A stretch of DNA of 64,000 nt, taken from positions 186,001 through 250,000 of the IMG/VR virus record IMGVR_UViG_3300050821_009835. One strand, given 5' to 3'. Every line of letters starts with the position of its first letter. Positions within the stretch are counted from its first letter, which is position 1. This document shows positions 23,745-51,491 of this stretch, piece after piece. The translations under genes and the position numbers were made by a program. Below the pieces are notes generated by a model that ran no database searches, had not been told where the DNA came from, and saw only the letters and a list, made by a program, of their open reading frames with translations.

Positions 23745-25316
23745 ATGAAAAAACTCCTCAGCAATTTTTTCTTGGTGATTTTGCTTGCTTCAGCAAGTTT
23801 AGCCCAGATTCAGTCTAGTTTCTTTGGTATGAATCAATCTCATTCCATTGTTTGCCCAAATACTCCACTCAGTTTACAGTATCCGTTGTACGGAGTAAAT
23901 GCAGCACTTAGAGATTGGAATTTATGCACTACTCAGTGGGCAGACATAAATTCTGCTAATGGTGTGTACAATTTCGCAAGTCTAGATGGTCTTTTGGCAG
24001 GAGCAAAGTCAAAAAACGTAGATGTGTACATCACGCTAGGAGCTACCCCCAACTGGATATCCTCCAAACCAACAGACACTGCTTGCGACAGAGCCAACAG
24101 CTTCGGTCAACCTGCCGGAATGTGCGATCCTCCTTCCGATATAAACCCAGATGGTACGGGTACGGATACAGCTTGGAGAGCATTCATTACCGCACTAGTT
24201 ACTCATGTAAGCACCAGTAGCTATCTTCAGACGCATGCTCATATCATGTTTTACGAAATTTGGTCTGAGTTTTCTCGTTCAGATAGCATAGGGACCGCAA
24301 CTTGCAATGCCACAGGACCTACCTGTAGCTACCGGGGGACATTCGCCCAGATGCTCAGAATGACGCAAGATTTAAGATGCATAGTAGAAGGTTTTCCAAA
24401 TGATCCAATCACGGCGTTAAATACCACCTGCGGTAACGATAAAACCATGCCAGTAAGAGGGTTAGATCCAACAGCTAGAATAGCAGAAGGTGACGCTGGT
24501 GACACTCCTCTGGATAACGGTAACATTGTCATGCAGAACTATCTGTACTGCAATAATAATCCTCCAGTAAACAGCCAATGTAACTATGGATCTGCGGGAA
24601 GTGCAGCGACAGATATAATCGACGGTCATCCCTACTTTACCAGCCACGTCCCAGAAGCCCTAATTCCCGTACTTGCAGACATGATCTCCCGCCTGTCATT
24701 GACAGATCAAGCTAAACTTCGATTTGCCAGCGAAGGATCGTGGGGACAGAATTCAACTGTAAATGACCCTATGCTTCAAGCCGCGTATGTCCCAAGATGG
24801 TTTGCTGTTTTATTGATACAAAAGTTTGACAGAGGATACTGGTGGTCGTGGGACGGTGCTGGTGCTGGGGGAAATGGGGGTTTGTGGAACTCGGTTTCCA
24901 TGACTTTTCCTCCCAATCAGTGCAACACAATTGATCCTGTAGTAGGAGGATATGATTGCACAGGTGGGACGGCATTTAGAACTACTATACAGTGGTTTGT
25001 TGGAAATACGGTAACAGGAATAACCTGCCCCACTAGTTGCAGCAACCCAACGTTGGGCGTCTATACCATGACATTCACAGGGGTCAACGGTCAGACGTTT
25101 GTCATGGTGTGGGATAGTTCTCAAACCTCTCCTTGCAGCAATCCCATGTGTGGGCAAACCCCGCTTCCTACATTACCATTTCAAGCAGCAAATTGGCAGG
25201 ATGTTTTAGGAAATAACTATAGCGGGCAGCCAAAAACAATTGGCGCGAGTCCCATTTGGTTAGTAAAGGGAACTGGACCGCTGGCACCACAAAATCTAGG
25301 AGCAATCGTAAATTAA
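23745..25316 (+). CDS. Secreted glycoside-hydrolase-like protein (clan GH-A, GH39-like)
   Basis: Signal peptide MKKLLSNFFLVILLASASLA. Contains FFGMN, WADINSANGVYNFASLD, YEIWSE (acid/base-like), HPY and SEGSWG (nucleophile-like). Confidence 0.65.
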   Translation: MKKLLSNFFLVILLASASLAQIQSSFFGMNQSHSIVCPNTPLSLQYPLYGVNAALRDWNLCTTQWADINSANGVYNFASLDGLLAGAKSKNVDVYITLGATPNWISSKPTDTACDRANSFGQPAGMCDPPSDINPDGTGTDTAWRAFITALVTHVSTSSYLQTHAHIMFYEIWSEFSRSDSIGTATCNATGPTCSYRGTFAQMLRMTQDLRCIVEGFPNDPITALNTTCGNDKTMPVRGLDPTARIAEGDAGDTPLDNGNIVMQNYLYCNNNPPVNSQCNYGSAGSAATDIIDGHPYFTSHVPEALIPVLADMISRLSLTDQAKLRFASEGSWGQNSTVNDPMLQAAYVPRWFAVLLIQKFDRGYWWSWDGAGAGGNGGLWNSVSMTFPPNQCNTIDPVVGGYDCTGGTAFRTTIQWFVGNTVTGITCPTSCSNPTLGVYTMTFTGVNGQTFVMVWDSSQTSPCSNPMCGQTPLPTLPFQAANWQDVLGNNYSGQPKTIGASPIWLVKGTGPLAPQNLGAIVN

Positions 25317-26579: not shown

Positions 26580-27752
26580 ATGATGGGAACGGGCGTAAAA
26601 GCAGCAAAACTTGACCCCAAAAAGAAGTCCAACGATGCTGTAGAATTTGAAAAAGCTCTCCAGCGCAAAATCGTCGGCCAGGAAGCTGCCGTCGAGAAGA
26701 TGGTTGAAATCTACCAGATGTTCCTGGCTGGGTTGAATCCTCCGGGACGGCCCGTCGGCAATCTGCTTTTTCTCGGACCCACCGGAACTGGTAAAACGCG
26801 AGTCGTGGAAGCCATGGCCGAGAGTCTGTTTGGAGATGCACGCGCCTGCATCAAAATTGATTGTGCAGAATTTCAGCACTCTCACGAAATCGCCAAATTA
26901 GTGGGTTCTCCTCCAGGATATCTTGGTCATCGTGAAACTCACCCCGTTCTTACTCAAGAAGCATTGAATCAATGGCATACGGGTACGCTGAAACTCTCTA
27001 TTCTCCTTTTTGACGAAATTGAAAAGGCTTCGGATGCCCTCTGGCAGTTGCTGCTCGGTATTCTCGACAAAGCCACGCTAACTCTCGGCGATAACCACCG
27101 AGTGGATCTGTCACAGTGCATCATCATCATGACCTCAAATCTAGGAGCAAGTGAGATGTCAAAGCTCCAGGGCGACGAAGAGAGGATGGGTTTTTCCAAA
27201 AAGATTGAGCTCGAAGATGTAGATGATGATAAGATAGAGGCAGAGGCCAAAGAAGCTTGTAAAAGAAAATTCACCCCGGAATTTATGAATCGTATCGACA
27301 AAATTGTAACTTTCAAAACTCTGCGAGAGGCGCATCTGAAGCAGATTCTAGACATTGAGATTGGCATGGTGCAACAACGTGTGTTGATGGCCTCTGCTGG
27401 TAATCAATTTGTCTTCAAATGTGATGATTTAGCCAAGAATTTTTTGCTCAAAGAAGGTTCGGATGCAAAATATGGTGCACGCCACTTAAAGCGGGCGATC
27501 GAAAGATTCTTAGTTTTCCCTCTAGCTAATCTTGTTGCAACAAAACAGGTTAAATTGGGCGATCTTATTCTTGTTTCTCTGGATAAAGAAGGTAAGGAAT
27601 TAACCTTTACCAAAGAAGCGGAAAACGCCATGGTGGAAGCCTTGATGGCAACTTACGGTCGAGAGTCCATTGTACCAGCAACTCCCCTTGCTAAACCGTA
27701 TGAATTTGGAAAAGAAAAGCCGCTAACTGCAACTAAGCCATATTACATATGA
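26580..27752 (+). CDS. ClpA/ClpB-family AAA+ ATPase with only the second (D2) module
   Basis: IVGQEAAV, LFLGPTGTGKT (Walker A), GSPPGYLGH, LLFDEIEKA (Walker B), IMTSN, PEFMNRID, YGARHLKRAIE. Confidence 0.9.
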   Translation: MMGTGVKAAKLDPKKKSNDAVEFEKALQRKIVGQEAAVEKMVEIYQMFLAGLNPPGRPVGNLLFLGPTGTGKTRVVEAMAESLFGDARACIKIDCAEFQHSHEIAKLVGSPPGYLGHRETHPVLTQEALNQWHTGTLKLSILLFDEIEKASDALWQLLLGILDKATLTLGDNHRVDLSQCIIIMTSNLGASEMSKLQGDEERMGFSKKIELEDVDDDKIEAEAKEACKRKFTPEFMNRIDKIVTFKTLREAHLKQILDIEIGMVQQRVLMASAGNQFVFKCDDLAKNFLLKEGSDAKYGARHLKRAIERFLVFPLANLVATKQVKLGDLILVSLDKEGKELTFTKEAENAMVEALMATYGRESIVPATPLAKPYEFGKEKPLTATKPYYI

Positions 27753-27754
27753 AC

Positions 27755-28804
27755 TTAAACCCGAGGCAGCATTAAACGTGAAGAACCAGGTTGGGGTTCC
27801 TCTACGATTTTGCGTATTTTGCGCCAATCGCGTTTTGGCATTTCTAGTTTTGCAAGCAGGGCTTCGCTTCGCTTTAGTCGTTTTCTTAGCGGTTTGAGAA
27901 TTTCTGCTATTTGCATTTTAATAGAGGCGCTTTCTCGCTTTTGTCTTCCAATCTGATTTTCCGTTTCTTCTTCTGTTATTGATTTCCCTGCCCATTTTAA
28001 TGGGAGAGTAGCACAAATTGATGCCATTGTGTGACCAACCCCTCTGTAGGGAAAAAATCGGCTAATTTTGTAATCAGAGCCTTTAAAGACATGAGCTAGG
28101 ACAGCAGGCACGACGTCATGGGGAATGTAACCCGGCTTTTTCTCAAGGTGGCATTCCTTAGTGATGGGTTGGATGACACTGTTCACCATCTTCCTTCCCC
28201 ATTTACTTCTAGGCTGTCGTAACGGTGCTCCTACTAATCGAGCTAATTTATCAAAAGCCTCTCGACCAAATTTCCCACGACGAACGGAGTTAGTAAATGA
28301 GATAGATTCTATACCGGAGGTTAAGACTTGGGTGGCCAGGGCCACTTCATAATCTCCGAATACAGCTACAAGATCAGCGTCGACGTCGGATACAATTTCA
28401 GGTAATGGGCTAAACGGATAGTGATATTCGTCGCCACCTTCTTGAAGTCTTTTGATGACTTCTAGTAAATCCCCTTCTATCACTCGTCCTTCAAAATTGT
28501 TGGCGTTGGCGTAATTCAGGATTTCACGAGCAGTTTTAGAATCATTTTCTACGAAAACCATCTGAGAATCAAGAAAACCTCGTAGTCTAAGTTCTTCCAC
28601 ATGACGTGCAAAAGAGCCAAAATGCGGGCTTCCCATAGTTGCCACAGCCAAGCCTTCGCGAGGATGACTTCGGGGATTCAAGACTCTAAGAATTTCCTGG
28701 GTGCTACGCTGTTTTCCTTGAGAATTGGTGTTGTGGTTGACGTGGCATTTTTTGCGACTTCGATTCAGAGTGGTTAGTTTCCTGAAGCTAATTGTTCCCC
28801 TCAT
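27755..28804 (-). CDS. Hypothetical protein, possible class I SAM-dependent methyltransferase-like fold
   Basis: ATMGSP (motif I-like), MVFVEND (acidic end of strand 2), IEGDLLE, VDAD and a terminal YRGVGHTM. Strong AAGGAG RBS. Confidence 0.4.
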   Translation of the reverse strand: MRGTISFRKLTTLNRSRKKCHVNHNTNSQGKQRSTQEILRVLNPRSHPREGLAVATMGSPHFGSFARHVEELRLRGFLDSQMVFVENDSKTAREILNYANANNFEGRVIEGDLLEVIKRLQEGGDEYHYPFSPLPEIVSDVDADLVAVFGDYEVALATQVLTSGIESISFTNSVRRGKFGREAFDKLARLVGAPLRQPRSKWGRKMVNSVIQPITKECHLEKKPGYIPHDVVPAVLAHVFKGSDYKISRFFPYRGVGHTMASICATLPLKWAGKSITEEETENQIGRQKRESASIKMQIAEILKPLRKRLKRSEALLAKLEMPKRDWRKIRKIVEEPQPGSSRLMLPRV

Positions 28805-36692: not shown

Positions 36693-37442
36693 ATGTTCAT
36701 CTATCTTATCGTCAACCATATCACCGGGAAATATTACGTTGGACAACACAAAGGCAAGAGTCTCCAGAAATACCTCGTAGCCAAATTCTGGGATGCCCGT
36801 CATCAGAGAAACGGACGATCCTATCTCTACAACTCCATGAGAAAACATCCGGACCCTTCGGTCTGGTCCATTCACGCTCTCCTATCCGATATCCAAACCA
36901 AAACTGAACTAGATAAGTATGAAAAAGAGTTCATCAAGTTTCTTCGTTCACGAGATCCTGAATACGGATACAATATCTGTAAAGGTGGAGAGGGTTTCAC
37001 TGGTCCGGGGTTCAGGGGGCCACGTACTGAGGAGTGGAAGCAAAAGATAAGAAAGACCATGAAAGAACGCAACATAAAGCCCCGTTTACGCTGGTCTTCC
37101 TTAAAAGACATGACTGGGCAAATTATAAATGGTATAGAGATCCTCAGAAGGCTAGAAAATAATAAAGAAGAAGATGCAATCTGGTTTTGCCAGTGTTTTT
37201 GTGGTAGAACTTTTACAGCTGTAGGGAGTTGTTTACGAAGCGGGCATACCCGAAGCTGCGGCTGTCTCAAAATCCAACAGAACGAACAGAACTTGAGTCA
37301 TGGATCAGAAGCGGGTTTGAAAAAGATGCGAGATGACCCTCAAGAATTTTCCCGTAGGGTAAAAATGGGGATGAGACGTGCTAAAGCAGCAAGGGAGCGA
37401 TCCAAACAAAACTATCTTTCCCAATCACAGGGTGCTGCATGA
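36693..37442 (+). mobile_element. Free-standing GIY-YIG homing endonuclease
   Basis: FIYLIVNHITGKYYVGQH, YGYNICKGGEG, NUMOD-like RTEEWKQKI, and a WFCQCFCG...HTRSCGC Zn module. Confidence 0.85.
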
Positions 37443-37564: not shown

Positions 37565-40500
37565 GTGATTACAGTACTTGACAACACCACATGGGCGCAA
37601 GCAGATTTGGATGGAAATTCTGCTTTCATAGAAGTCATCGGTCCTGGCAGCCCACCTCAGGAATCCCTCTTTGTTGTTTCTAACAATCGTGCTGATAATT
37701 CCTTCATCATTCTTGAATCCTCCCTTGGAGCAGGTTCCCCTCCTGTGGAACTCTTAGGGAGTTCTTTTACAGTCGTAGCAGAGTATGTTTTTCCCTATGC
37801 TGCTGGCACCCCGCCATTTCCTAATCAAGAATTTGCCCCGTGTGTAGCTTATGATCCGATAGCAGGTGTGATTCATATTGTTGGTCTAAGAAACAATTTG
37901 ACCAACCCGCGCTTTTTTGATTTTATCAAATTCCAGTACAACGTCGCAACAGGAGTCCTAACCGGGCCAACTGTGTTAGCAACAACTTCTCTTATCCGAT
38001 CAGGCTACGACATCATCGTATTAGGTAACAGCGACACTGTCATTGGTGTTATTCTAACGGATGCGACCACGATAGGCTCACCCCCAGAAATGCCGGGCCA
38101 GAGTTTAGTGATTTTCGAGTTGGACCCAAATGACAATCTGGTTTCTGTTACTCAGTTGCTGAATTCTCCAGACAATTCGTCCAGTACTGCGTCCTTGATA
38201 ACTTATAATTCTCTGTCATTGGCTTCTCCTGATGGCGTTAATGTAGAGTTATACTGGGAGCAACACCCGCGTTTGATTACGTTTAAAGATCAGCTGTTTC
38301 AGATTTTTTTCGCTCTACGTAGCGGCGGTGTTTGGAATCTCCCTGGGAATCCGATTGAATCCTTTGTTGGGCGTTATTCCGATGATCGTCTCACGGTTCT
38401 CCAAGATACACAAGGAGGACGTTACCTAGCACAAATATTTTATACGCAAACTAACATCCCAGAAGGTATCACTGGGAATTTGCTGCTCGGTTATTTGCAA
38501 GGCGGGGGATCTTGGATATTTCAAATTGTGAAGGGTTCGCTAAACGGTTCAATTGTAGAAGCTACTCTGTCTCTTGATCAAGCTGGTAATGTATTCGTTG
38601 CTTATTTGATAGAGGACCTTCTCACAGGTCAAGTGGGTGGTCCCACTTACCCGATGCAATTAGCATCGGTGAATCTGGCCAACCTCGCCGTAACTAATCT
38701 CCCTGGGTGGTACAACAATCACAATTTTACTTGGCTTCGAGGCACTAAATCGATCGTTGACGATTTGTCCATGTGGGCTGTTGTGGCAGAAGAGCAAGTT
38801 GGTGGGAGTCCGACTATTGATACCCCGAGCTATCTCTCGGGCATCCATACTCCTCCCGTGGCTGTATTGTCCCCAGCTTCAGTGGTCGTAGAACGTGGGA
38901 CTCCACAATTCTTTGATGCTAGTGCATCCTACGATACTACCGAAGACCCGATTACTTACAATTGGTCAGAAACTAGCCCAGATTTGGTAGATGTAACTCT
39001 TGCACCCAATGGGGATACGGCCATTCTGAATGTCGCTCGCGCTATTGGTGGCGGGCAGCGCATTTTTGACGTTACAGTAGAAGAGACGACTTCTTATTAC
39101 CCAACCCCCGAAAACGGATCTATAGCATCCTCACTGGTTACTGTCCCATTTGACCCGCCGTCTTATGTCGAGTTTCTGGGTCTTGCATTTTTGGGGTCTC
39201 CTCCGATACCAACAATCTATGCCGCTAGAAATACAAGTGTTACAATTACACCAACGTATTTTCCAGAACCCCCGAATGCGGATGCCCTGATGTCCTACAC
39301 TTGGACACAAACGATGGGGGATATGGTTGAACCTTTGAGTTTTTCAACGCCGACTTTTACTTTCCCAACCAATGGGTTGTCGGTGAATGGGGAAACCCTG
39401 ATGTTCACTGTTCAAGTCAATGATGGGGTTACAACCACATGGAGTTCTGCCACAAACTATTCTATTGGAGACTCAGCAATTTACAACAACGCTGTTTACA
39501 CAGCTCAAGAAGCTAACACGAATGTTTTGCCTCCTAACTCTCCTACAGTTTGGTCGTTCATTGGTTTTAATCTAGCCACTGTTCAGGTGATTGTTGCCTC
39601 ATACGAAGAACAGAATCCCTCGTATATCCCTAATACACTTCGATTAGCTCGTGCTATATGGCAAACTGGAGGTTCTCCGCCATCTAATGCTACTATCAGT
39701 CAACGTAACTCACTGGTGCCCTCCTACAGTTCTTTAAGTGTCTCCGGGGTTTGGTCTAATTTACAGAATATCAAGCGTATTTCTGTCATTAGTGGGCAAA
39801 ATCGGGAACTCATTATTTCGCCTGCGTCAGCGTTGGTGTATGGTGGGGTAGCGCCGAATGTAGTACTGCTTACGCGCTGCCTAACGCCGCTAGGTACCCC
39901 AATTCTGGATGCTTTTCACACAGAACAAGATTACACTCTTGTATTGACGTTGGACGGGAATCCAGCAACATACAAAATCTATCGCTATATGACAGCCTAC
40001 CATGTTGATACAGATAACCCGGACGCTTTTATAGATCTGTCAACTATCGTGCCAGAAATGGCCTTTAATACGATAACAGCTACAATTGTTTACAACAACG
40101 TTCGTGTTATTGCTTTATCTGGCCTAAATGGATGTTTGTTGCTTCAAGTAAACTCTCAAACTCTTACCCCTGAAGGTTTTACGGTGTTTTCTGTAGAGTC
40201 CAAAAGGCTCTACGGTGCGGATAATGTTCAATGGGTTCGTATGGCGAATGTAGAAAGCGTCAATTCTGGTTTGATTCTAATCGGCAGCATTCAAATAGTA
40301 GGTAACCCACCTGTAAGCAGCACTTATGAAACGTTTTATGATCTCCCATCGGGAACTATTTTGGGTGTTTGGGACAAGACTAAATTAGTGAATCAAATTG
40401 TGAATACAGGTGAAATCCTCTTTGAGGCGATTTCTACGTATGGTGGTTTTCCTGCTACTCCTACTATGGGTGTTCCTACTCTTATTGATGGAGTGGTAAC

Positions 40501-40639
40501 TCTATCTTGGTCTGAAGTAAACCCAAGTTCTATTGATGGATATGAGATCTTCTATTCAAGTGACGGCGTTTCGTATTCCAGCTTTCAAGTAGGCTCGGGA
40601 GCCATTCAGTCCATTCAAATCCCATTGTCGCAACTATGA
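37565..40639 (+). CDS. Large virion-type protein with PKD/Ig-like domains, a CBM5/12-like module and a truncated C-terminal FN3
   Basis: FDASASYD...ITYNWS (PKD), WSSATNYSIGD...YNNAVYTA...PTVW (CBM5/12-like) and VTLSW...GYEIFYS (FN3 N-half). Confidence 0.6.
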   Translation: MITVLDNTTWAQADLDGNSAFIEVIGPGSPPQESLFVVSNNRADNSFIILESSLGAGSPPVELLGSSFTVVAEYVFPYAAGTPPFPNQEFAPCVAYDPIAGVIHIVGLRNNLTNPRFFDFIKFQYNVATGVLTGPTVLATTSLIRSGYDIIVLGNSDTVIGVILTDATTIGSPPEMPGQSLVIFELDPNDNLVSVTQLLNSPDNSSSTASLITYNSLSLASPDGVNVELYWEQHPRLITFKDQLFQIFFALRSGGVWNLPGNPIESFVGRYSDDRLTVLQDTQGGRYLAQIFYTQTNIPEGITGNLLLGYLQGGGSWIFQIVKGSLNGSIVEATLSLDQAGNVFVAYLIEDLLTGQVGGPTYPMQLASVNLANLAVTNLPGWYNNHNFTWLRGTKSIVDDLSMWAVVAEEQVGGSPTIDTPSYLSGIHTPPVAVLSPASVVVERGTPQFFDASASYDTTEDPITYNWSETSPDLVDVTLAPNGDTAILNVARAIGGGQRIFDVTVEETTSYYPTPENGSIASSLVTVPFDPPSYVEFLGLAFLGSPPIPTIYAARNTSVTITPTYFPEPPNADALMSYTWTQTMGDMVEPLSFSTPTFTFPTNGLSVNGETLMFTVQVNDGVTTTWSSATNYSIGDSAIYNNAVYTAQEANTNVLPPNSPTVWSFIGFNLATVQVIVASYEEQNPSYIPNTLRLARAIWQTGGSPPSNATISQRNSLVPSYSSLSVSGVWSNLQNIKRISVISGQNRELIISPASALVYGGVAPNVVLLTRCLTPLGTPILDAFHTEQDYTLVLTLDGNPATYKIYRYMTAYHVDTDNPDAFIDLSTIVPEMAFNTITATIVYNNVRVIALSGLNGCLLLQVNSQTLTPEGFTVFSVESKRLYGADNVQWVRMANVESVNSGLILIGSIQIVGNPPVSSTYETFYDLPSGTILGVWDKTKLVNQIVNTGEILFEAISTYGGFPATPTMGVPTLIDGVVTLSWSEVNPSSIDGYEIFYSSDGVSYSSFQVGSGAIQSIQIPLSQL

Positions 40640-41629
40640 TTGTGGAAGTAATGTTACAATGTTAGACGGAAGTGAAGTACCGTCTCCATTGCTGGCAGTC
40701 ATGTAAAATTGAAACAGAATCCCGGAGAGAGCCTGCTGAGCTTCGAGATGGCTTTGAGCGTAGTATATATTTGCTGGATTATACGCAATTTCTATGTACG
40801 ACTCTGGAATTTCAAACGCATCACACCCGTTAGCCCGTGCAAATGGTAGAATTACTAATGGATCCGTGATTGTGTCAGGATTTTGCAGTTGTAGGAAATG
40901 ATAGACATCGGGGTATGCTGCAAAAAGGCTTACCCAATCACCGCTGGATTGACCCTGTGTGTCTCCTCCACTAGCCGAGTCGTTTCCGATTCCTAAACCC
41001 GCGTTTGCAAAAATTTGTCCTGTTCCATAGGTAATTGCATTTGAAATGCAATTGCTCACGTTGTAGCATATTTGTATAGAAGAATTTAGACTCTTTACGA
41101 ATGCTGCAAGATTGGTTAAATAAGCCTGTACCCCCGGTATTCCTCCCCAAGCCGAGGGATTATTTAAGTAGCATGGTGGGCAGGATAAATCCCCTTGAAA
41201 GGGGCCAACCCTGACATAAAGTACGTTGTTGGCATAGTTTGATGCTTCGAGATGAGTGATTAATGCTTGGATGAACGCTTCTTCTCTGGCAACAAAGAAT
41301 GGAGATACAGTAATGGGCAATGGTTGTGGGTAGGCAGGGCACGCTATGGAAGGCGTCCCGGATACTACATATGCTGGGGTTGCCGTATTAGGTCCTGGAG
41401 TCGGGGAGAGGCCAGAACTTCCCGCTAAAGTGACTATAATGGCAACATTTTTGCCTATACTGGTAAATGGAGCATTCATTGCATCGAGAGCTGACCAATT
41501 GTAAACTCCTTCGCTGGTTTCTATTTGCGCCCAGTTGATCCGGGTTGCAAATGTGGAGATATGTGGTACAATATATTCCCAGAATGCTGGAGTGTCCGGG
41601 TTGAAACTGCTTACGATAGTCATGCCCAT
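40634..41629 (-). CDS. Glycoside-hydrolase-like TIM-barrel protein (GH42/GH-A-like) with an FN3 F-G strand tail
   Basis: RINWAQIETSEGVYNWSALD motif; own RBS; C-terminal FQFYMTASNGDGTSLPSNIV. Confidence 0.6.
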   Translation of the reverse strand: MGMTIVSSFNPDTPAFWEYIVPHISTFATRINWAQIETSEGVYNWSALDAMNAPFTSIGKNVAIIVTLAGSSGLSPTPGPNTATPAYVVSGTPSIACPAYPQPLPITVSPFFVAREEAFIQALITHLEASNYANNVLYVRVGPFQGDLSCPPCYLNNPSAWGGIPGVQAYLTNLAAFVKSLNSSIQICYNVSNCISNAITYGTGQIFANAGLGIGNDSASGGDTQGQSSGDWVSLFAAYPDVYHFLQLQNPDTITDPLVILPFARANGCDAFEIPESYIEIAYNPANIYYAQSHLEAQQALSGILFQFYMTASNGDGTSLPSNIVTLLPQS

Positions 41630-41683: not shown

Positions 41684-41857
41684 GTGAGTCTCTGTCCAGA
41701 TTATTGCGATTGTCGCCAATGTAAACATGGTACCCCTGCATGCGAACCATGTAAAGACTGTCGTCAGGAAAGAGAAGTTGCCCAACATCAAATCGATCAT
41801 CAGCATAGTGTAGAACGACAACGAGCAAGAATCAAGAAAGCGCCTTGGAGAGAATGA
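41684..41857 (+). CDS. Small Cys-rich protein (57 aa)
   Basis: AAGGAGG RBS and GTG start: MSLCPDYCDCRQCKHGTPACEPCKDC. Confidence 0.55.
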   Translation: MSLCPDYCDCRQCKHGTPACEPCKDCRQEREVAQHQIDHQHSVERQRARIKKAPWRE

Positions 41858-41858
41858 A

Positions 41859-42872
41859 GTGCTCTTAAGTAAAAATGATCTCCTCAAAACTCTGCGTTCT
41901 CTCAGTGAATTTGATACTAACGCCAGCCCGTTTGTCGCCGTTCAGCTAGTGGAGAACAGTCTCCCACGCTTCTTTCGTTCCTCCATAAATGGCCAAATCA
42001 TGTCCTCGGATTTTGATTTACTAAAAACAGGCAACACTTATGTTTCGCTGTCACATTTTAAGGATTGTCTCAAGGTACTACCAGAAGAGAAGATCGAATT
42101 ATCACTGGATCCTAACGGTATTTTGAAGATTTCCTCCTTGGACAACACTTTTGACTCAGAGATTCGTGTGCACACAGTCCCGGTGACTCAGGCAGGTCTC
42201 AAAGCACATGATTTGGGCGGCGTGGCAACCCGGCTTGGTGCGAATACATTCTTGGGTTGTGACACATCTCCTTTTGCGGCAGCCTCCCCGCCTATGCTGG
42301 TTAACGGGCGACTCTTTATTTCCACTAAATTCGGCGCAGTAATGTGGAATGGTCCAGATTGGCTCCGCGCTGTTCAATTGCAGCCGCGTGAACCATTTCT
42401 AAAGCTGATCACGGGAAATTCGGCTGTTGAAGATTTGTTTCTCACTGAGAAGGGTTATTGGGGAACGGCGATTGCGGGCATGGTCATTTTTAGTTACGGT
42501 CATCTGCTCGGTAGAGAACTTTTCGACGCCTATGCTGCCCCTGGTGTGGAGCTAACGCGGTTCCCAGCTGCTCGTCTTGTTCAAGCGTTGCACGCCGCAG
42601 CAGGACTTTGCGATGATCAAGACAAAGTCGAGATTCGACCTAAAGAAGGCATTGTGGTGCGTGATAAATTCGGCAATGATTCTAGGTTTTCACTAGGCGG
42701 TAGTGATGGGTGGCAAAAATTTACGGCTTTTGGGAGAACGATGAAGACGATTGCCGATGCGCTTTCTCAAGCGGCGGATGAAGAAGCGGTATTACTGGAT
42801 ATACCCAGCTTTACAAATCCGACCAAGCGACTTCAACGCGGACCATGGTCTGTGAGTTTTAAAACATTATGA
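41859..42872 (+). CDS. Probable sliding clamp (DnaN-like), divergent
   Basis: 337 aa. VSLSHFKDCLKVLPEEKIELSL...LKIS and FPAARLVQAL..AAGL resemble beta-clamp repeats; replication gene context. Confidence 0.45.
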   Translation: MLLSKNDLLKTLRSLSEFDTNASPFVAVQLVENSLPRFFRSSINGQIMSSDFDLLKTGNTYVSLSHFKDCLKVLPEEKIELSLDPNGILKISSLDNTFDSEIRVHTVPVTQAGLKAHDLGGVATRLGANTFLGCDTSPFAAASPPMLVNGRLFISTKFGAVMWNGPDWLRAVQLQPREPFLKLITGNSAVEDLFLTEKGYWGTAIAGMVIFSYGHLLGRELFDAYAAPGVELTRFPAARLVQALHAAAGLCDDQDKVEIRPKEGIVVRDKFGNDSRFSLGGSDGWQKFTAFGRTMKTIADALSQAADEEAVLLDIPSFTNPTKRLQRGPWSVSFKTL

Positions 42873-50652: not shown

Positions 50653-50775
50653 ATGGAAACAAATTGGCATGAATGGACGAGTTGTGAATTTTACGGTCAT
50701 GTTTTCCAGACCGATGAAGAAACTGGCCGCACTCATTGCACAGACTGCGGTGAAAAAACCGAAGACCACGAGTAG
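50653..50775 (+). CDS. Small zinc-ribbon protein (40 aa)
   Basis: GGAGG RBS; C..GH...CTDC; its stop overlaps the 5' end of tRNA-Ile. Confidence 0.45.
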   Translation: METNWHEWTSCEFYGHVFQTDEETGRTHCTDCGEKTEDHE

Positions 50776-50842
50776 CTCAGTTGGTAGCAGCAATTGGCCG
50801 ATAACCGATAGGTCGCAGGTTCGATCCCTGCCTCGTGGACCA
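50766..50842 (+). tRNA. tRNA-Ile(GAT)
   Basis: Acceptor CCACGAG/CTCGTGG, anticodon loop CC-GAT-AA, TTCGAT T-loop, encoded CCA. Confidence 0.9.
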
Positions 50843-50929
50843 AAATTTTAATGGAGGCCAAATATGGCTGAAGAAAAGGAACAGCACGAGGAGTATCCGA
50901 TGAACGGGCCTTGTTGCTAGAGGAATTTT

Positions 50930-51011
50930 GCTAGGATGGCTCAGCGGCGACAGCAGCAGTTTCGTACACTGCCATACAAACACAGGGGTTCGAGTCCCCT
51001 TCCTAGCTCCA
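50930..51011 (+). tRNA. tRNA-Thr(CGT) with 11-nt variable region
   Basis: Acceptor GCTAGGA/TCCTAGC, stem GCAGT/ACTGC, loop TT-CGT-AC, TTCGAGT, encoded CCA. Confidence 0.85.
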
Positions 51012-51016
51012 AGTTT

Positions 51017-51089
51017 GCAGATGTAACACAATTGGCAGTGTACTTCCTTGGTAAGGAAGAGGTTGTGGGTTCGACTCCCATCGTCTGCT
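51017..51089 (+). tRNA. tRNA-Thr(GGT), CCA not encoded
   Basis: Acceptor GCAGATG/CGTCTGC, stem CTTCC/GGAAG, loop TT-GGT-AA, TTCGACT. Confidence 0.9.
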
Positions 51090-51311
51090 CTTTCGTGACT
51101 TTCTTTAAGAAAGGTTCATGACGAATTATGAATAACGGGTGCCCATGTAGCAGCTGTCATCCATACGGTGCAGCTTATTGTTGGTGTTTTCTCCACAGAC
51201 TAGAGCACCCGTTAGTAGAGAAGATTATCAATGCGGAGAGCTGGCGTGAAACCAGCCAATTGATGAATGAACTTTACACGACGTATTTGAGTCGTTTAGG
51301 AAGATAAGTTT

Positions 51312-51397
51312 GCTGGTATCGCATAGTGGCCGATTGCAGCAGTTTTGTAAACTGCCGGAGAAATCCCACGGGGGTCCAAATCCCTCTGCCAGCTCCA
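51312..51397 (+). tRNA. tRNA-Thr(TGT) with long variable arm
   Basis: Acceptor GCTGGTA/TGCCAGC, loop TT-TGT-AA, V-arm GGA-GAAA-TCC, T-loop TCCAAAT, encoded CCA. Confidence 0.85.
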
Positions 51398-51404
51398 AAA
51401 TTTT

Positions 51405-51491
51405 AGGGCGGTCGGGTAATGGCATCCCACCTGACTTTGAATCAGACGAGCCTTCGGCTCATTGTAGGTTCGAATCCTACCCGCCCTGCCA
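51405..51491 (+). tRNA. tRNA-Gln(TTG) with long variable arm
   Basis: Acceptor AGGGCGG/CCGCCCT, G73, loop CT-TTG-AA, V-arm GAGC-CTTCG-GCTC, TTCGAAT, encoded CCA. Confidence 0.88.

What the first reader, a model, noticed from the sequence alone, without database searches (positions are those of the whole stretch)
40430..40740. One FN3 domain split between two convergent genes on opposite strands
Seen: the 1024-aa + strand protein ends with FN3 strands A-E only (PATP...VTLSW...IDGYEIFYS...SIQIPLSQL*). The abutting - strand GH-like protein ends with the missing F-G strands (LSGILFQFYMTASNGDGTSLPSNIVTLLPQS*). Flipping 40631-40723 gives ...IQIPLS-GILFQFYMTASNGDGTSLPSNIV (complete FN3) and ...HLEAQQALS-QL* (a plausible GH end). 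No inverted repeats flank those breakpoints. Inference: either a micro-inversion that swapped the two C-termini (ancient, switchable or an assembly artefact), or strand complementation that clips a glycan hydrolase onto a virion protein as an exchangeable module.
Basis: partly seen in the sequence, partly recalled or inferred. Interest (0 to 1): 0.75.

Follow-up and report, generated by a model that had tools for sequence, protein, structure and literature searches.

The report
Micro-inversion swapped two gene tails
In a large soil phage, a 93-base stretch at the meeting point of two head-on genes has been flipped, so the last two strands of a fibronectin-type domain now hang on a neighbouring sugar-cutting-like enzyme instead of on their own protein; it is a real and tidy mutational curiosity, and whether the two halves re-join as proteins is untested.

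Summary
The 1024-aa + strand protein (37565-40639) stops after FN3 strands A-E. The 331-aa - strand TIM-barrel protein (40634-41629) ends with a 29-aa tail that is the missing F-G hairpin.

Evidence that this is a derived inversion of about 93 nt:
- 27 homologues of the large protein carry the intact C-terminal FN3, colinear with the in-silico flip.
- Four of five homologues of the TIM-barrel protein end 2-5 residues after the breakpoint; the fifth (P0005) has an unrelated 15-residue extension.
- A profile of the homologous FN3 domains is tiled by the two proteins: positions 1-64 on one, 63-90 on the other.
- In the two closest relatives the TIM-barrel gene is absent from the locus, and the tail's homologue lies on the + strand.
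- So the enzyme gene was inserted head-on, and the junction then (or at once) inverted in frame.

Other points:
- No inverted repeats flank the segment, and no invertase lies in the 265-kb record.
- Every contig found, whatever the assembler, shows the same orientation. Raw reads were not available.
- A structure model pairs the tail with the half domain (ipSAE 0.72, best control 0.00). This allows trans-complementation but does not show it.

Most likely this is a fixed, non-programmed micro-inversion that the phage tolerates.

The parts
37565..40639 (+). Gene of the 1024-aa multidomain protein. It has an N-terminal beta-propeller (about 1-425, sialidase/GH145-like fold), PKD-like domains, a CBM5/12-like module, a beta-sandwich region (about 730-940), a linker, then FN3 strands A-E only.
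40445..40630 (+). FN3 strands A-E (residues 961-1022). They match positions 1-64 of the 92-position family FN3 profile.
40631..40723 (.). The inverted segment, 93 nt. Each breakpoint is ambiguous by 3 nt (40628-40630 and 40724-40726) because both genes have a Ser codon starting TC there.
40631..40639 (+). CAA CTA TGA = Gln-Leu-stop. This was the original end of the TIM-barrel gene and now ends the large protein.
   Evidence: homologues end ...ALQLP*...VLQLK*...ALALP*
40637..40723 (-). FN3 strands F-G (29 aa, residues 303-331 of the 331-aa protein). They are now the C-terminal tail of the TIM-barrel protein, use the large gene's original TAG stop (40634-40636), and are disordered in the monomer model.
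40724..41629 (-). Body of the GH35/GH42-like (beta/alpha)8-barrel protein (residues 1-302). It has no signal peptide, unlike 4 of its 5 homologues. It is absent from this locus in the closest relatives.
41684..41857 (+). A 57-aa Cys-rich ORF with an AAGGAGG ribosome-binding site. Like the TIM-barrel gene, it has no counterpart between the two conserved genes in the relatives, so it is part of the inserted block.
41859..42872 (+). Conserved 337-aa gene. In the relatives it follows the large gene after only 14-16 nt, which marks the right edge of the inserted block.

Best explanation
This is a real, derived, non-programmed micro-inversion.

Proposed history. In the ancestor the large beta-propeller/PKD/CBM/FN3 protein gene ended with a complete FN3 domain and was followed directly by the 337-aa gene. 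A block of about 1.2 kb, carrying a GH35/42-like TIM-barrel gene in the opposite orientation plus a 57-aa Cys-rich ORF, was inserted there. The two stop codons then overlapped (TCATAG / CTATGA). After that, or in the same complex event, the 93 nt spanning the two 3' ends were reversed in place.

Breakpoints. One lies in the E-F loop of the FN3 (after Ser1022). The other lies after Ser302 of the enzyme, two codons before its stop. Both are in the same codon phase, so each gene now reads in frame into the other's tail and uses the other's stop.

Likely cause (inferred). Only 2 nt of inverted microhomology are present. A replication template switch or a two-break rejoining therefore fits better than a site-specific recombinase.

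Result (shown). The large protein ends with a five-strand half FN3 plus Gln-Leu. The enzyme carries the F-G hairpin as a floppy 29-aa tail.

Consequence (inferred). The lesion is tolerated, since this form is the one in every contig found that spans the junction. The two fragments may re-associate when both proteins are made in the same cell. That would be a by-product until shown to be selected.
For: Shown:
- The flip restores both family-typical ends.
- 26 homologues (36-66% identity) align through the join to their own C-termini.
- Five of the six nearly invariant F-G residues are kept in the tail, and the sixth is Tyr to Phe.
- The family FN3 profile is tiled 1-64 / 63-90 by the two proteins.
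- Four of the five homologues of the enzyme end 2-5 residues after the breakpoint. The enzyme family profile ends at residue 301-302.
- In relatives L003 and L005 (portal 82-86% identical, 337-aa protein 80-82%) the large gene and the 338/337-aa gene are 14-16 nt apart. The enzyme's only match there is its tail, on the + strand 3' end of the large gene.
- The enzyme gene is one of only two ORFs of 250 aa or more on the - strand in 64 kb.
- There is no IR at the breakpoints and no second copy of either half in the genome.
- No resolvase/invertase, tyrosine recombinase or IS110 transposase lies in the record.
- The junction is identical in the IMG/VR record, a JGI 340,335-bp contig and a Logan contig at depth 24.

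Inferred: the mutational mechanism, and that the lesion is tolerated.
Against: - No raw reads could be laid; the runs are held only as contigs. Read-level support, and the absence of a minor flipped subpopulation, are therefore not shown.
- The contigs probably come from one sample or a few related samples, so they are independent assemblers, not independent populations.
- The record is only 78% complete, and the 340-kb contig could not be searched for recombinases.
- The tail shows no decay (71% identity to P0009 over 21 aa, against 56% for the whole domain). The enzyme lacks the signal peptide that most of its homologues have. Both facts would also fit a selected, tethering role.
Confidence: 0.72

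Rival explanations
1. Selected split-domain tether. The inversion is kept because the F-G hairpin on the enzyme completes the half FN3 on the large protein by beta-strand complementation. This would non-covalently clip a glycan-active enzyme onto a glycan-binding (possibly virion) protein.
For: - The complex model gives ipSAE 0.72 (three runs 0.66-0.74) against a best control of 0.00.
- The interface is residues 960-1024 of the large protein with residues 304-327 of the enzyme. These are the A, B and C strand regions expected for an F-G hairpin.
- The tail is disordered and free in the monomer model.
- The tail keeps the family's conserved residues.
- The enzyme lacks a signal peptide, so both proteins would be cytoplasmic together.
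- Engineered FN3 (monobody) fragments do complement non-covalently (PMC11666773, citing Dutta et al. 2005).
Against: - A predictor will reassemble two pieces of one known fold whether or not this occurs in cells. The tool's own caveat says so.
- No second lineage has the arrangement, so selection cannot be tested.
- Virion location of the large protein is not shown: no PHROG match.
- The published split was in the CD loop, not the EF loop.
- The residue aligned with a Glu conserved in all five homologues is Leu here, so the enzyme may not even be active.
Confidence: 0.18
2. Programmed invertible switch (phase variation). The segment would flip between both orientations, toggling between an intact FN3 and the swapped state.
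For: Phage invertible segments that exchange C-terminal ends of surface proteins are well known (Mu G, P1 C; from general knowledge). The inversion is exactly in frame in both genes.
Against: - No inverted repeats lie at the ends.
- No serine, tyrosine or IS110 recombinase is in the 265-kb record.
- Only one orientation appears in all contigs. The left flank fetched a single metagenome locus, which is in this orientation.
- In-frame swapping has a prior of 1 in 3 for any inversion between two convergent reading frames (inference).
Confidence: 0.05
3. Assembly or library artefact: the true genome has the flipped (intact FN3) orientation.
For: Raw reads were not available, and all contigs may derive from the same read set or related sets.
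Against: - Different assemblers give the same junctions at 100% identity. These are the IMG/VR record, the JGI contig and Logan's contig at depth 24. An ENA contig of 264,969 bp also carries the same 1024-aa product.
- An assembler needs a repeat of about k-mer length to invert a path, and none exists.
- The 93-nt segment is probably shorter than one read (read length not checked), so junction k-mers must come from reads (inference).
Confidence: 0.05

Closest known systems
Short in-place inversions from replication template switching or quasi-palindrome-type events (a known mutation class; from general knowledge, not checked in the paper library)
   Same: A segment of tens of bases is reversed in place. 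There are no long inverted repeats, at most a few bases of microhomology, and no dedicated enzyme.
   Different: Here the segment spans the overlapping stops of two convergent genes and is in phase in both. It therefore exchanges protein tails and splits a folded domain between two polypeptides. I did not find such an outcome described, but I made no dedicated literature search for it.
Invertible tail-fibre segments of phages Mu (G/Gin), P1 (C/Cin) and e14 (P/Pin), and plasmid shufflons (Rci)
   Same: A DNA inversion exchanges the C-terminal coding end of a phage or plasmid surface protein.
   Different: Those are kilobase segments bounded by 19-34-bp inverted recombination sites with an adjacent recombinase. 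They switch between alternative cassettes of the same gene. Here the segment is 93 nt, with no repeats, no recombinase found and one orientation only, and the partners are two unrelated genes.
Donor-strand complementation in chaperone-usher pilus subunits
   Same: An Ig-like beta-sandwich that lacks C-terminal strand(s) could be completed by strands supplied by another polypeptide.
   Different: Pilins lack one strand (G). They are completed by an N-terminal extension of the next subunit in an evolved, chaperone-assisted pathway. Here two strands (F-G) sit at the C-terminus of an unrelated enzyme, and complementation is only modelled.
Engineered FN3 (monobody) fragment complementation (Dutta et al. 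2005, as cited; split monobody in PMC11666773)
   Same: It shows that two separate fragments of an FN3 domain can form a functional domain non-covalently.
   Different: This is engineered. The split read in the paper is in the CD loop, whereas here it is in the EF loop. The natural case is untested.
GH35/GH42-type beta-galactosidase (beta/alpha)8 barrels (clan GH-A-like)
   Same: The fold of residues 1-303 matches (Foldseek TM 0.55-0.71). Pfam gives a weak GH42 hit.
   Different: Identity is 9-17% and there is no Pfam hit above the cut-off. A Glu conserved after strand 4 in all five homologues (GGE) is GDL here. The protein has a single domain of about 300 aa.

Membership tests
Fibronectin type III domain (Pfam PF00041), as one domain split over two genes | Sequence match to the FN3 profile over all seven strands | tested here: met
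   Homologous C-termini match PF00041: P0010 at 30.1 bits and P0017 at 29.0 bits (cut-off 25), P0008 at 23.8 and P0009 at 18.9. The window's A-E piece alone gives 13.7 bits over profile positions 16-40. In the family profile the + protein covers 1-64, the - protein tail covers 63-90 and the flipped join covers 1-90. The flipped protein itself could not be sent to Pfam.
Fibronectin type III domain (Pfam PF00041), as one domain split over two genes | The two pieces form one beta-sandwich | tested here: met
   In silico only. The complex model puts tail residues 304-327 against residues 960-1024, with ipSAE 0.72 against a best control of 0.00.
Site-specific invertible segment (Gin/Hin/Cin/Pin or shufflon type) | Inverted repeat recombination sites at both ends of the segment | tested here: not met
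   With seed 6 and minimum length 8 there is no pair at 40628-40631 / 40723-40726, and only a 2-nt TC/GA match.
Site-specific invertible segment (Gin/Hin/Cin/Pin or shufflon type) | A recombinase gene in the element | tested here: not met
   PF00239, PF00589 and PF01548 give no match in the 264,912-bp record, and the positive controls rang. The record is 78% complete, so absence is not final.
Site-specific invertible segment (Gin/Hin/Cin/Pin or shufflon type) | Both orientations present in a population | tested here: inconclusive
   Only the present orientation is seen in every contig found that spans the junction. Contigs drop minor variants, and raw reads were not available.
Clan GH-A-like glycoside hydrolase (GH35/GH42-like) | (beta/alpha)8 barrel fold | tested here: met
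   The AF2 model has mean pLDDT 77.5 and eight strand-helix units over residues 1-303. Foldseek hits GH35 and GH42 proteins with probability 1.00 and TM 0.55-0.71.
Clan GH-A-like glycoside hydrolase (GH35/GH42-like) | Catalytic acid/base after strand 4 and nucleophile after strand 7 | tested here: inconclusive
   The homologues share GGE after strand 4, where the window protein has GDL. No conserved Glu follows strand 7 (family motif YLQ). Glu273 after strand 8 is invariant. Activity is therefore not established for the family or for this copy.
Donor-strand / fragment complementation pair | Physical association of the two polypeptides | not testable with these tools
   Only a model is available. 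This needs co-expression and pull-down, or virion proteomics.
Virion structural protein (claimed for the 1024-aa protein) | Homology to a known virion component, or proteomic detection | tested here: not met
   There is no PHROG match. The fold matches are generic beta-propeller/Ig proteins, including phage G Gp424-427 of unnamed function. The only hint is the gene's position after the portal gene.

The most novel reading that the evidence does not exclude
The inversion created, in one mutational step, a natural split-domain tether. The F-G hairpin now carried by a laterally acquired glycan-active barrel completes the half FN3 at the end of the large glycan-binding protein, so the enzyme rides on that protein, possibly on the virion. 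This would be a newly born protein-protein interface made by DNA inversion, not by gradual evolution of a docking domain.
Probability: 0.18. Interest if true: 0.75.

Novelty: new variant of a known kind. Interest (0 to 1): 0.5.

Why it matters
This is a clean natural example of a small, repeat-free inversion across the abutting ends of convergent genes. The inversion exchanges protein tails in frame and leaves one folded domain divided between two polypeptides.

For annotation, it warns that a truncated terminal domain and an odd tail on the neighbouring opposite-strand gene can be two halves of one event.

For evolution, if the halves re-associate it would show how a new non-covalent partnership, an enzyme docked to a phage surface or glycan-binding protein, can arise in a single step. 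That is directly testable with two expressed proteins.

If they do not re-associate, it is simply a tolerated lesion showing that the conserved terminal FN3 is dispensable.

Tried and rejected
- Close relatives in IMG/VR. The search for related loci with both proteins found none. blastn against GenBank phages gave no match.
- Raw-read test. The three runs that hold the sequence are kept only as Logan contigs. One spans the junction (X1, probably the source sample). The RNA run X2 and DNA run X3 have short 100%-identical contigs that stop short of the junction.
- Search for the other orientation. The exact left flank was scanned in JGI metagenome contigs and fetched one locus, identical to the window.
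- Variant in the protein cluster. The second member differs only by Met/Val at the start.
- Recombinase search in the fuller 340-kb contig. That record is not held.
- Second copy of either half as a gene-conversion donor. None is in the genome.
- Compositional sign of recent transfer. The enzyme gene has the same GC (0.452 against 0.450) and GC3 (0.384 against 0.390) as the large gene, so this says nothing.
- A larger inversion that included the whole enzyme gene was rejected. It would put the F-G segment at the enzyme's 5' end, not its 3' end (inference from the layout).
- Chance resemblance of the tail was rejected.
- Dutta et al. 2005 could not be read. Only its title, and how PMC11666773 uses it, were verified.
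Full report
**What is there.** The window is bases 186,001-250,000 of a 264,912-bp IMG/VR virus record that is linear and estimated 78% complete. It looks like a large soil phage. It carries a portal gene, a family A DNA polymerase, homing endonucleases and a tRNA cluster, and almost all genes lie on the + strand.

At the finding, the + ORF 37565..40639 encodes 1024 aa ending ...SIQIPLSQL*. The - ORF 40634..41629 encodes 331 aa ending ...EAQQALSGILFQFYMTASNGDGTSLPSNIVTLLPQS*. The two ORFs overlap by six bases, CTATGA. Reversing 40631-40723 in silico gives a 1051-aa protein and a 304-aa protein ending ...EAQQALSQL*. Reversing 40628-40726 gives the same proteins, so each breakpoint is defined to within 3 nt.

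**Is it more than chance?**
- The 29-aa tail of the - strand protein, searched alone against 26 homologues of the + strand protein, hits the extreme C-termini of P0009 (residues 1187-1207 of 1211; 46.9 bits, E 3e-10) and P0008 (1074-1096 of 1100; 41.8 bits). The best of 200 shuffled tails reached 27.4 bits.
- A profile built from 14 homologous FN3 domains has 92 positions. The + protein matches positions 1-64 (48.8 bits). The - protein matches positions 63-90 (15.8 bits). The flipped + protein matches 1-90 (73.9 bits).
- Pfam fn3 (PF00041) is found on the homologues' C-termini. Two are above the cut-off and two just below. It is found only weakly on the window's A-E piece.

**Which state is ancestral?**
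- All 26 homologues of the large protein (36-66% identity over the C-terminal 345 aa) align through the in-silico join. Most run to within a few residues of their own stop. For example P0008 ends ...IQIQLISGVQYEFYMIAVNNDGTSVPSNTVSVTA*.
- The columns that are nearly invariant in the family but empty in the window protein are Y, F, D, G, S, S. The - strand tail carries F, F, D, G, S, S at those positions.
- Conversely, four of the five homologues of the 331-aa protein (29-53% identity) stop 2-5 residues after the point where the tail begins (...ALQLP*...VLQLK*...ALALP*...VLQISCKV*). The fifth, P0005, has an unrelated 15-residue extension. The flipped end ...ALSQL* has the same length as three of them. 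The profile of that family ends at residue 301-302.
- The present arrangement is therefore derived, and the flip restores both families' normal ends.

In the two closest relatives found the gene order is portal, (endonuclease), large protein, 338/337-aa protein, all on one strand. The relatives are L003 (from an NCBI assembly) and L005 (from a Logan contig). Their portal is 82-86% identical and their 337-aa protein 80-82%. Only 14-16 nt separate the large gene's stop from the next start.

The 331-aa protein has no counterpart in those loci except its residues 299-328. These hit the + strand 3' end of the relatives' large gene. The 57-aa Cys-rich ORF at 41684-41857, which has a strong AAGGAGG site, is also absent there.

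So a block of about 1.2 kb was inserted head-on behind the large gene. The inversion then took in the last 29 codons plus stop of the resident gene and the last 2 codons plus stop of the newcomer. Before the inversion the stops overlapped as TCATAG / CTATGA. A single complex event, insertion with an adjacent inversion, cannot be told apart from two successive events.

**What the two proteins are.**
- The 331-aa protein models as a (beta/alpha)8 barrel over residues 1-303 (mean pLDDT 77.5). Residues 304-331 have pLDDT under 50.
- Foldseek places the barrel with GH35 and GH42-type beta-galactosidase barrels (TM 0.55-0.71 at 9-17% identity). Pfam gives only a sub-threshold GH42 hit.
- Four of its five homologues have signal peptides or lipoprotein-like leaders, and the window copy has none. 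One homologue lies beside a lytic transglycosylase on a phage-like contig from the same sample.
- A Glu shared by all five homologues after strand 4 (GGE) is GDL here, so activity is uncertain.
- The 1024-aa protein models as an N-terminal beta-propeller resembling sialidase/GH145-type propellers (TM by target 0.6-0.67). It continues with PKD-like domains, a CBM5/12-like module, a beta-sandwich region, a disordered linker (943-962) and five strands of FN3.
- Nothing shows that it is a virion component. There is no PHROG match, and its position after the portal gene is the only hint.

**Real or artefact?**
- The same sequence, without one difference, stands in three places. These are the IMG/VR record, a JGI contig of 340,335 bp (L006, 13.5 kb compared) and a Logan contig of 56,210 bp at word depth 24 (L002, 13 kb compared). 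An ENA contig of 264,969 bp carries the same 1024-aa product.
- These are different assemblers, though probably of the same reads or related reads.
- There is no repeat near k-mer length at the breakpoints that could let an assembler invert a path.
- The 93-nt segment is shorter than a typical short read (the read length of these runs was not checked), so the junction words must come from reads (inference).
- Raw reads could not be examined. The three runs are held as contigs only, and the contigs of the two other samples stop short of the junction.
- I put an artefact at about 5%.

**Programmed or accidental?**
- No inverted repeats flank the segment.
- No resolvase/invertase, tyrosine recombinase or IS110-type transposase is found in the record, and the positive controls rang.
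- No second copy of either half exists in the genome.
- Only one orientation is seen.
- Each gene reading in frame into the other's tail needs only that both breakpoints share a codon phase. That has a prior of one in three (inference).
- With 2 nt of inverted microhomology (TC/GA), a replication template switch or a two-break rejoining is the most economical cause (inference from general knowledge of such mutations).

**Consequence.**
- Shown: the large protein lacks strands F-G, and the barrel protein carries them as a disordered tail.
- Modelled: residues 680-1024 of the large protein and the whole 331-aa protein were folded together, each with its alignment. The partner score was 0.72 (runs 0.66, 0.72, 0.74) against 0.00 for all three controls. 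In the tool's calibration this mark was reached by 58 of 80 solved complexes and 2 of 110 mismatched pairs.
- The interface is residues 960-1024 of the large protein with residues 304-327 of the barrel protein. The tail lies against the A, B and C strand regions, as F-G would.
It is also what any predictor should do with two pieces of one familiar fold, and the tool's own caveats apply.
- Engineered FN3 fragments do complement non-covalently, though the split read in the paper is in the CD loop (PMC11666773).
- Three points favour a real partnership: the tail is undecayed (71% identity to P0009 over 21 aa, against 56% for the whole domain), the tail is free in the model, and the barrel protein has no signal peptide.
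- Three points count against reading much into it. No second lineage shares the arrangement, so selection is untestable. A recent event explains the lack of decay equally well. Accessory Ig-like or FN3 domains on phage proteins are often dispensable (general knowledge).

**Verdict.**
- The finding is a real, derived, in-frame 93-nt micro-inversion at the junction of a resident gene and a head-on inserted gene. It swapped their tails and split an FN3 domain (confidence about 0.9 for the inversion as history, about 0.72 for the full account as fixed and non-programmed).
- Functional trans-complementation is possible (about 0.18), a switch is unlikely (0.05) and an artefact is unlikely (0.05).
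- It is a new variant of a known mutation class with an unusual and testable protein-level outcome.

Noticed in passing
window 23745-25316 (+): A second GH42-like gene of 523 aa with a clear N-terminal signal peptide. It is weakly similar to the 331-aa protein (31% over 111 aa, E 2e-6) and has a weak Pfam GH42 hit. The phage thus carries two distant members of this barrel family, one exported and one not.
   Followed up: partly
window 41186-41194 (- strand; residues 146-148 of the 331-aa protein): All five homologues have Gly-Gly-Glu after barrel strand 4, the place of the acid/base residue in clan GH-A enzymes. The window protein has Gly-Asp-Leu, so it may be inactive or use a shifted carboxylate.
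   Followed up: partly
window 41684-41857 (+): A 57-aa Cys-rich ORF (CPDYCDCRQCKHGTPACEPCKDC...) with an AAGGAGG ribosome-binding site. It ends at the start of the 337-aa gene, is absent from the relatives' loci, and has no Pfam match. It was apparently inserted together with the barrel gene.
   Followed up: partly
window 36693-37442 (+): A GIY-YIG-type homing endonuclease with an HNH-endonuclease-like C-terminal part lies between the portal and the large gene. It is present in relative L003 (51% identity) and absent in L005, as expected of a mobile endonuclease. Breaks made by such enzymes could favour local rearrangements; this is speculation.
   Followed up: no
window 26580-28804: The only other ORF of 250 aa or more on the - strand (27755-28804, 349 aa, no Pfam match) abuts head-on a ClpB-like AAA+ ATPase gene (26580-27752) with a 2-nt gap. 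I did not check it for a similar exchange of ends.
   Followed up: no
window 50766-51491 (+): A cluster of five tRNA genes: Ile-GAT, Thr-CGT, Thr-GGT, Thr-TGT and Gln-TTG. Three are different threonine isoacceptors.
   Followed up: no
L007 2781-3794 and neighbours; L008 1415-2880: Two homologues of the barrel protein sit in phage-like contexts. In L007 the gene follows a lytic transglycosylase (SLT) gene and lies near resolvase and methylase genes, in the same JGI sample as the window. In L008 a leaderless homologue with its own short C-terminal extension is followed at once by a He_PIG Ig-like domain gene.
   Followed up: no
window 40186-40371 and 41247-41598: A soil metatranscriptome run from another sample holds 100%-identical contigs inside both genes. 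This may mean both genes are transcribed, but DNA carry-over is not excluded, and neither contig reaches the junction.
   Followed up: no
P0012, P0031, P0033 (homologues of the large protein): In these three homologues the match to FN3 A-E and the match to F-G lie about 140-180 residues apart. This is probably tandem FN3 domains aligned in halves, not an insertion in the E-F loop. I did not resolve it.
   Followed up: no
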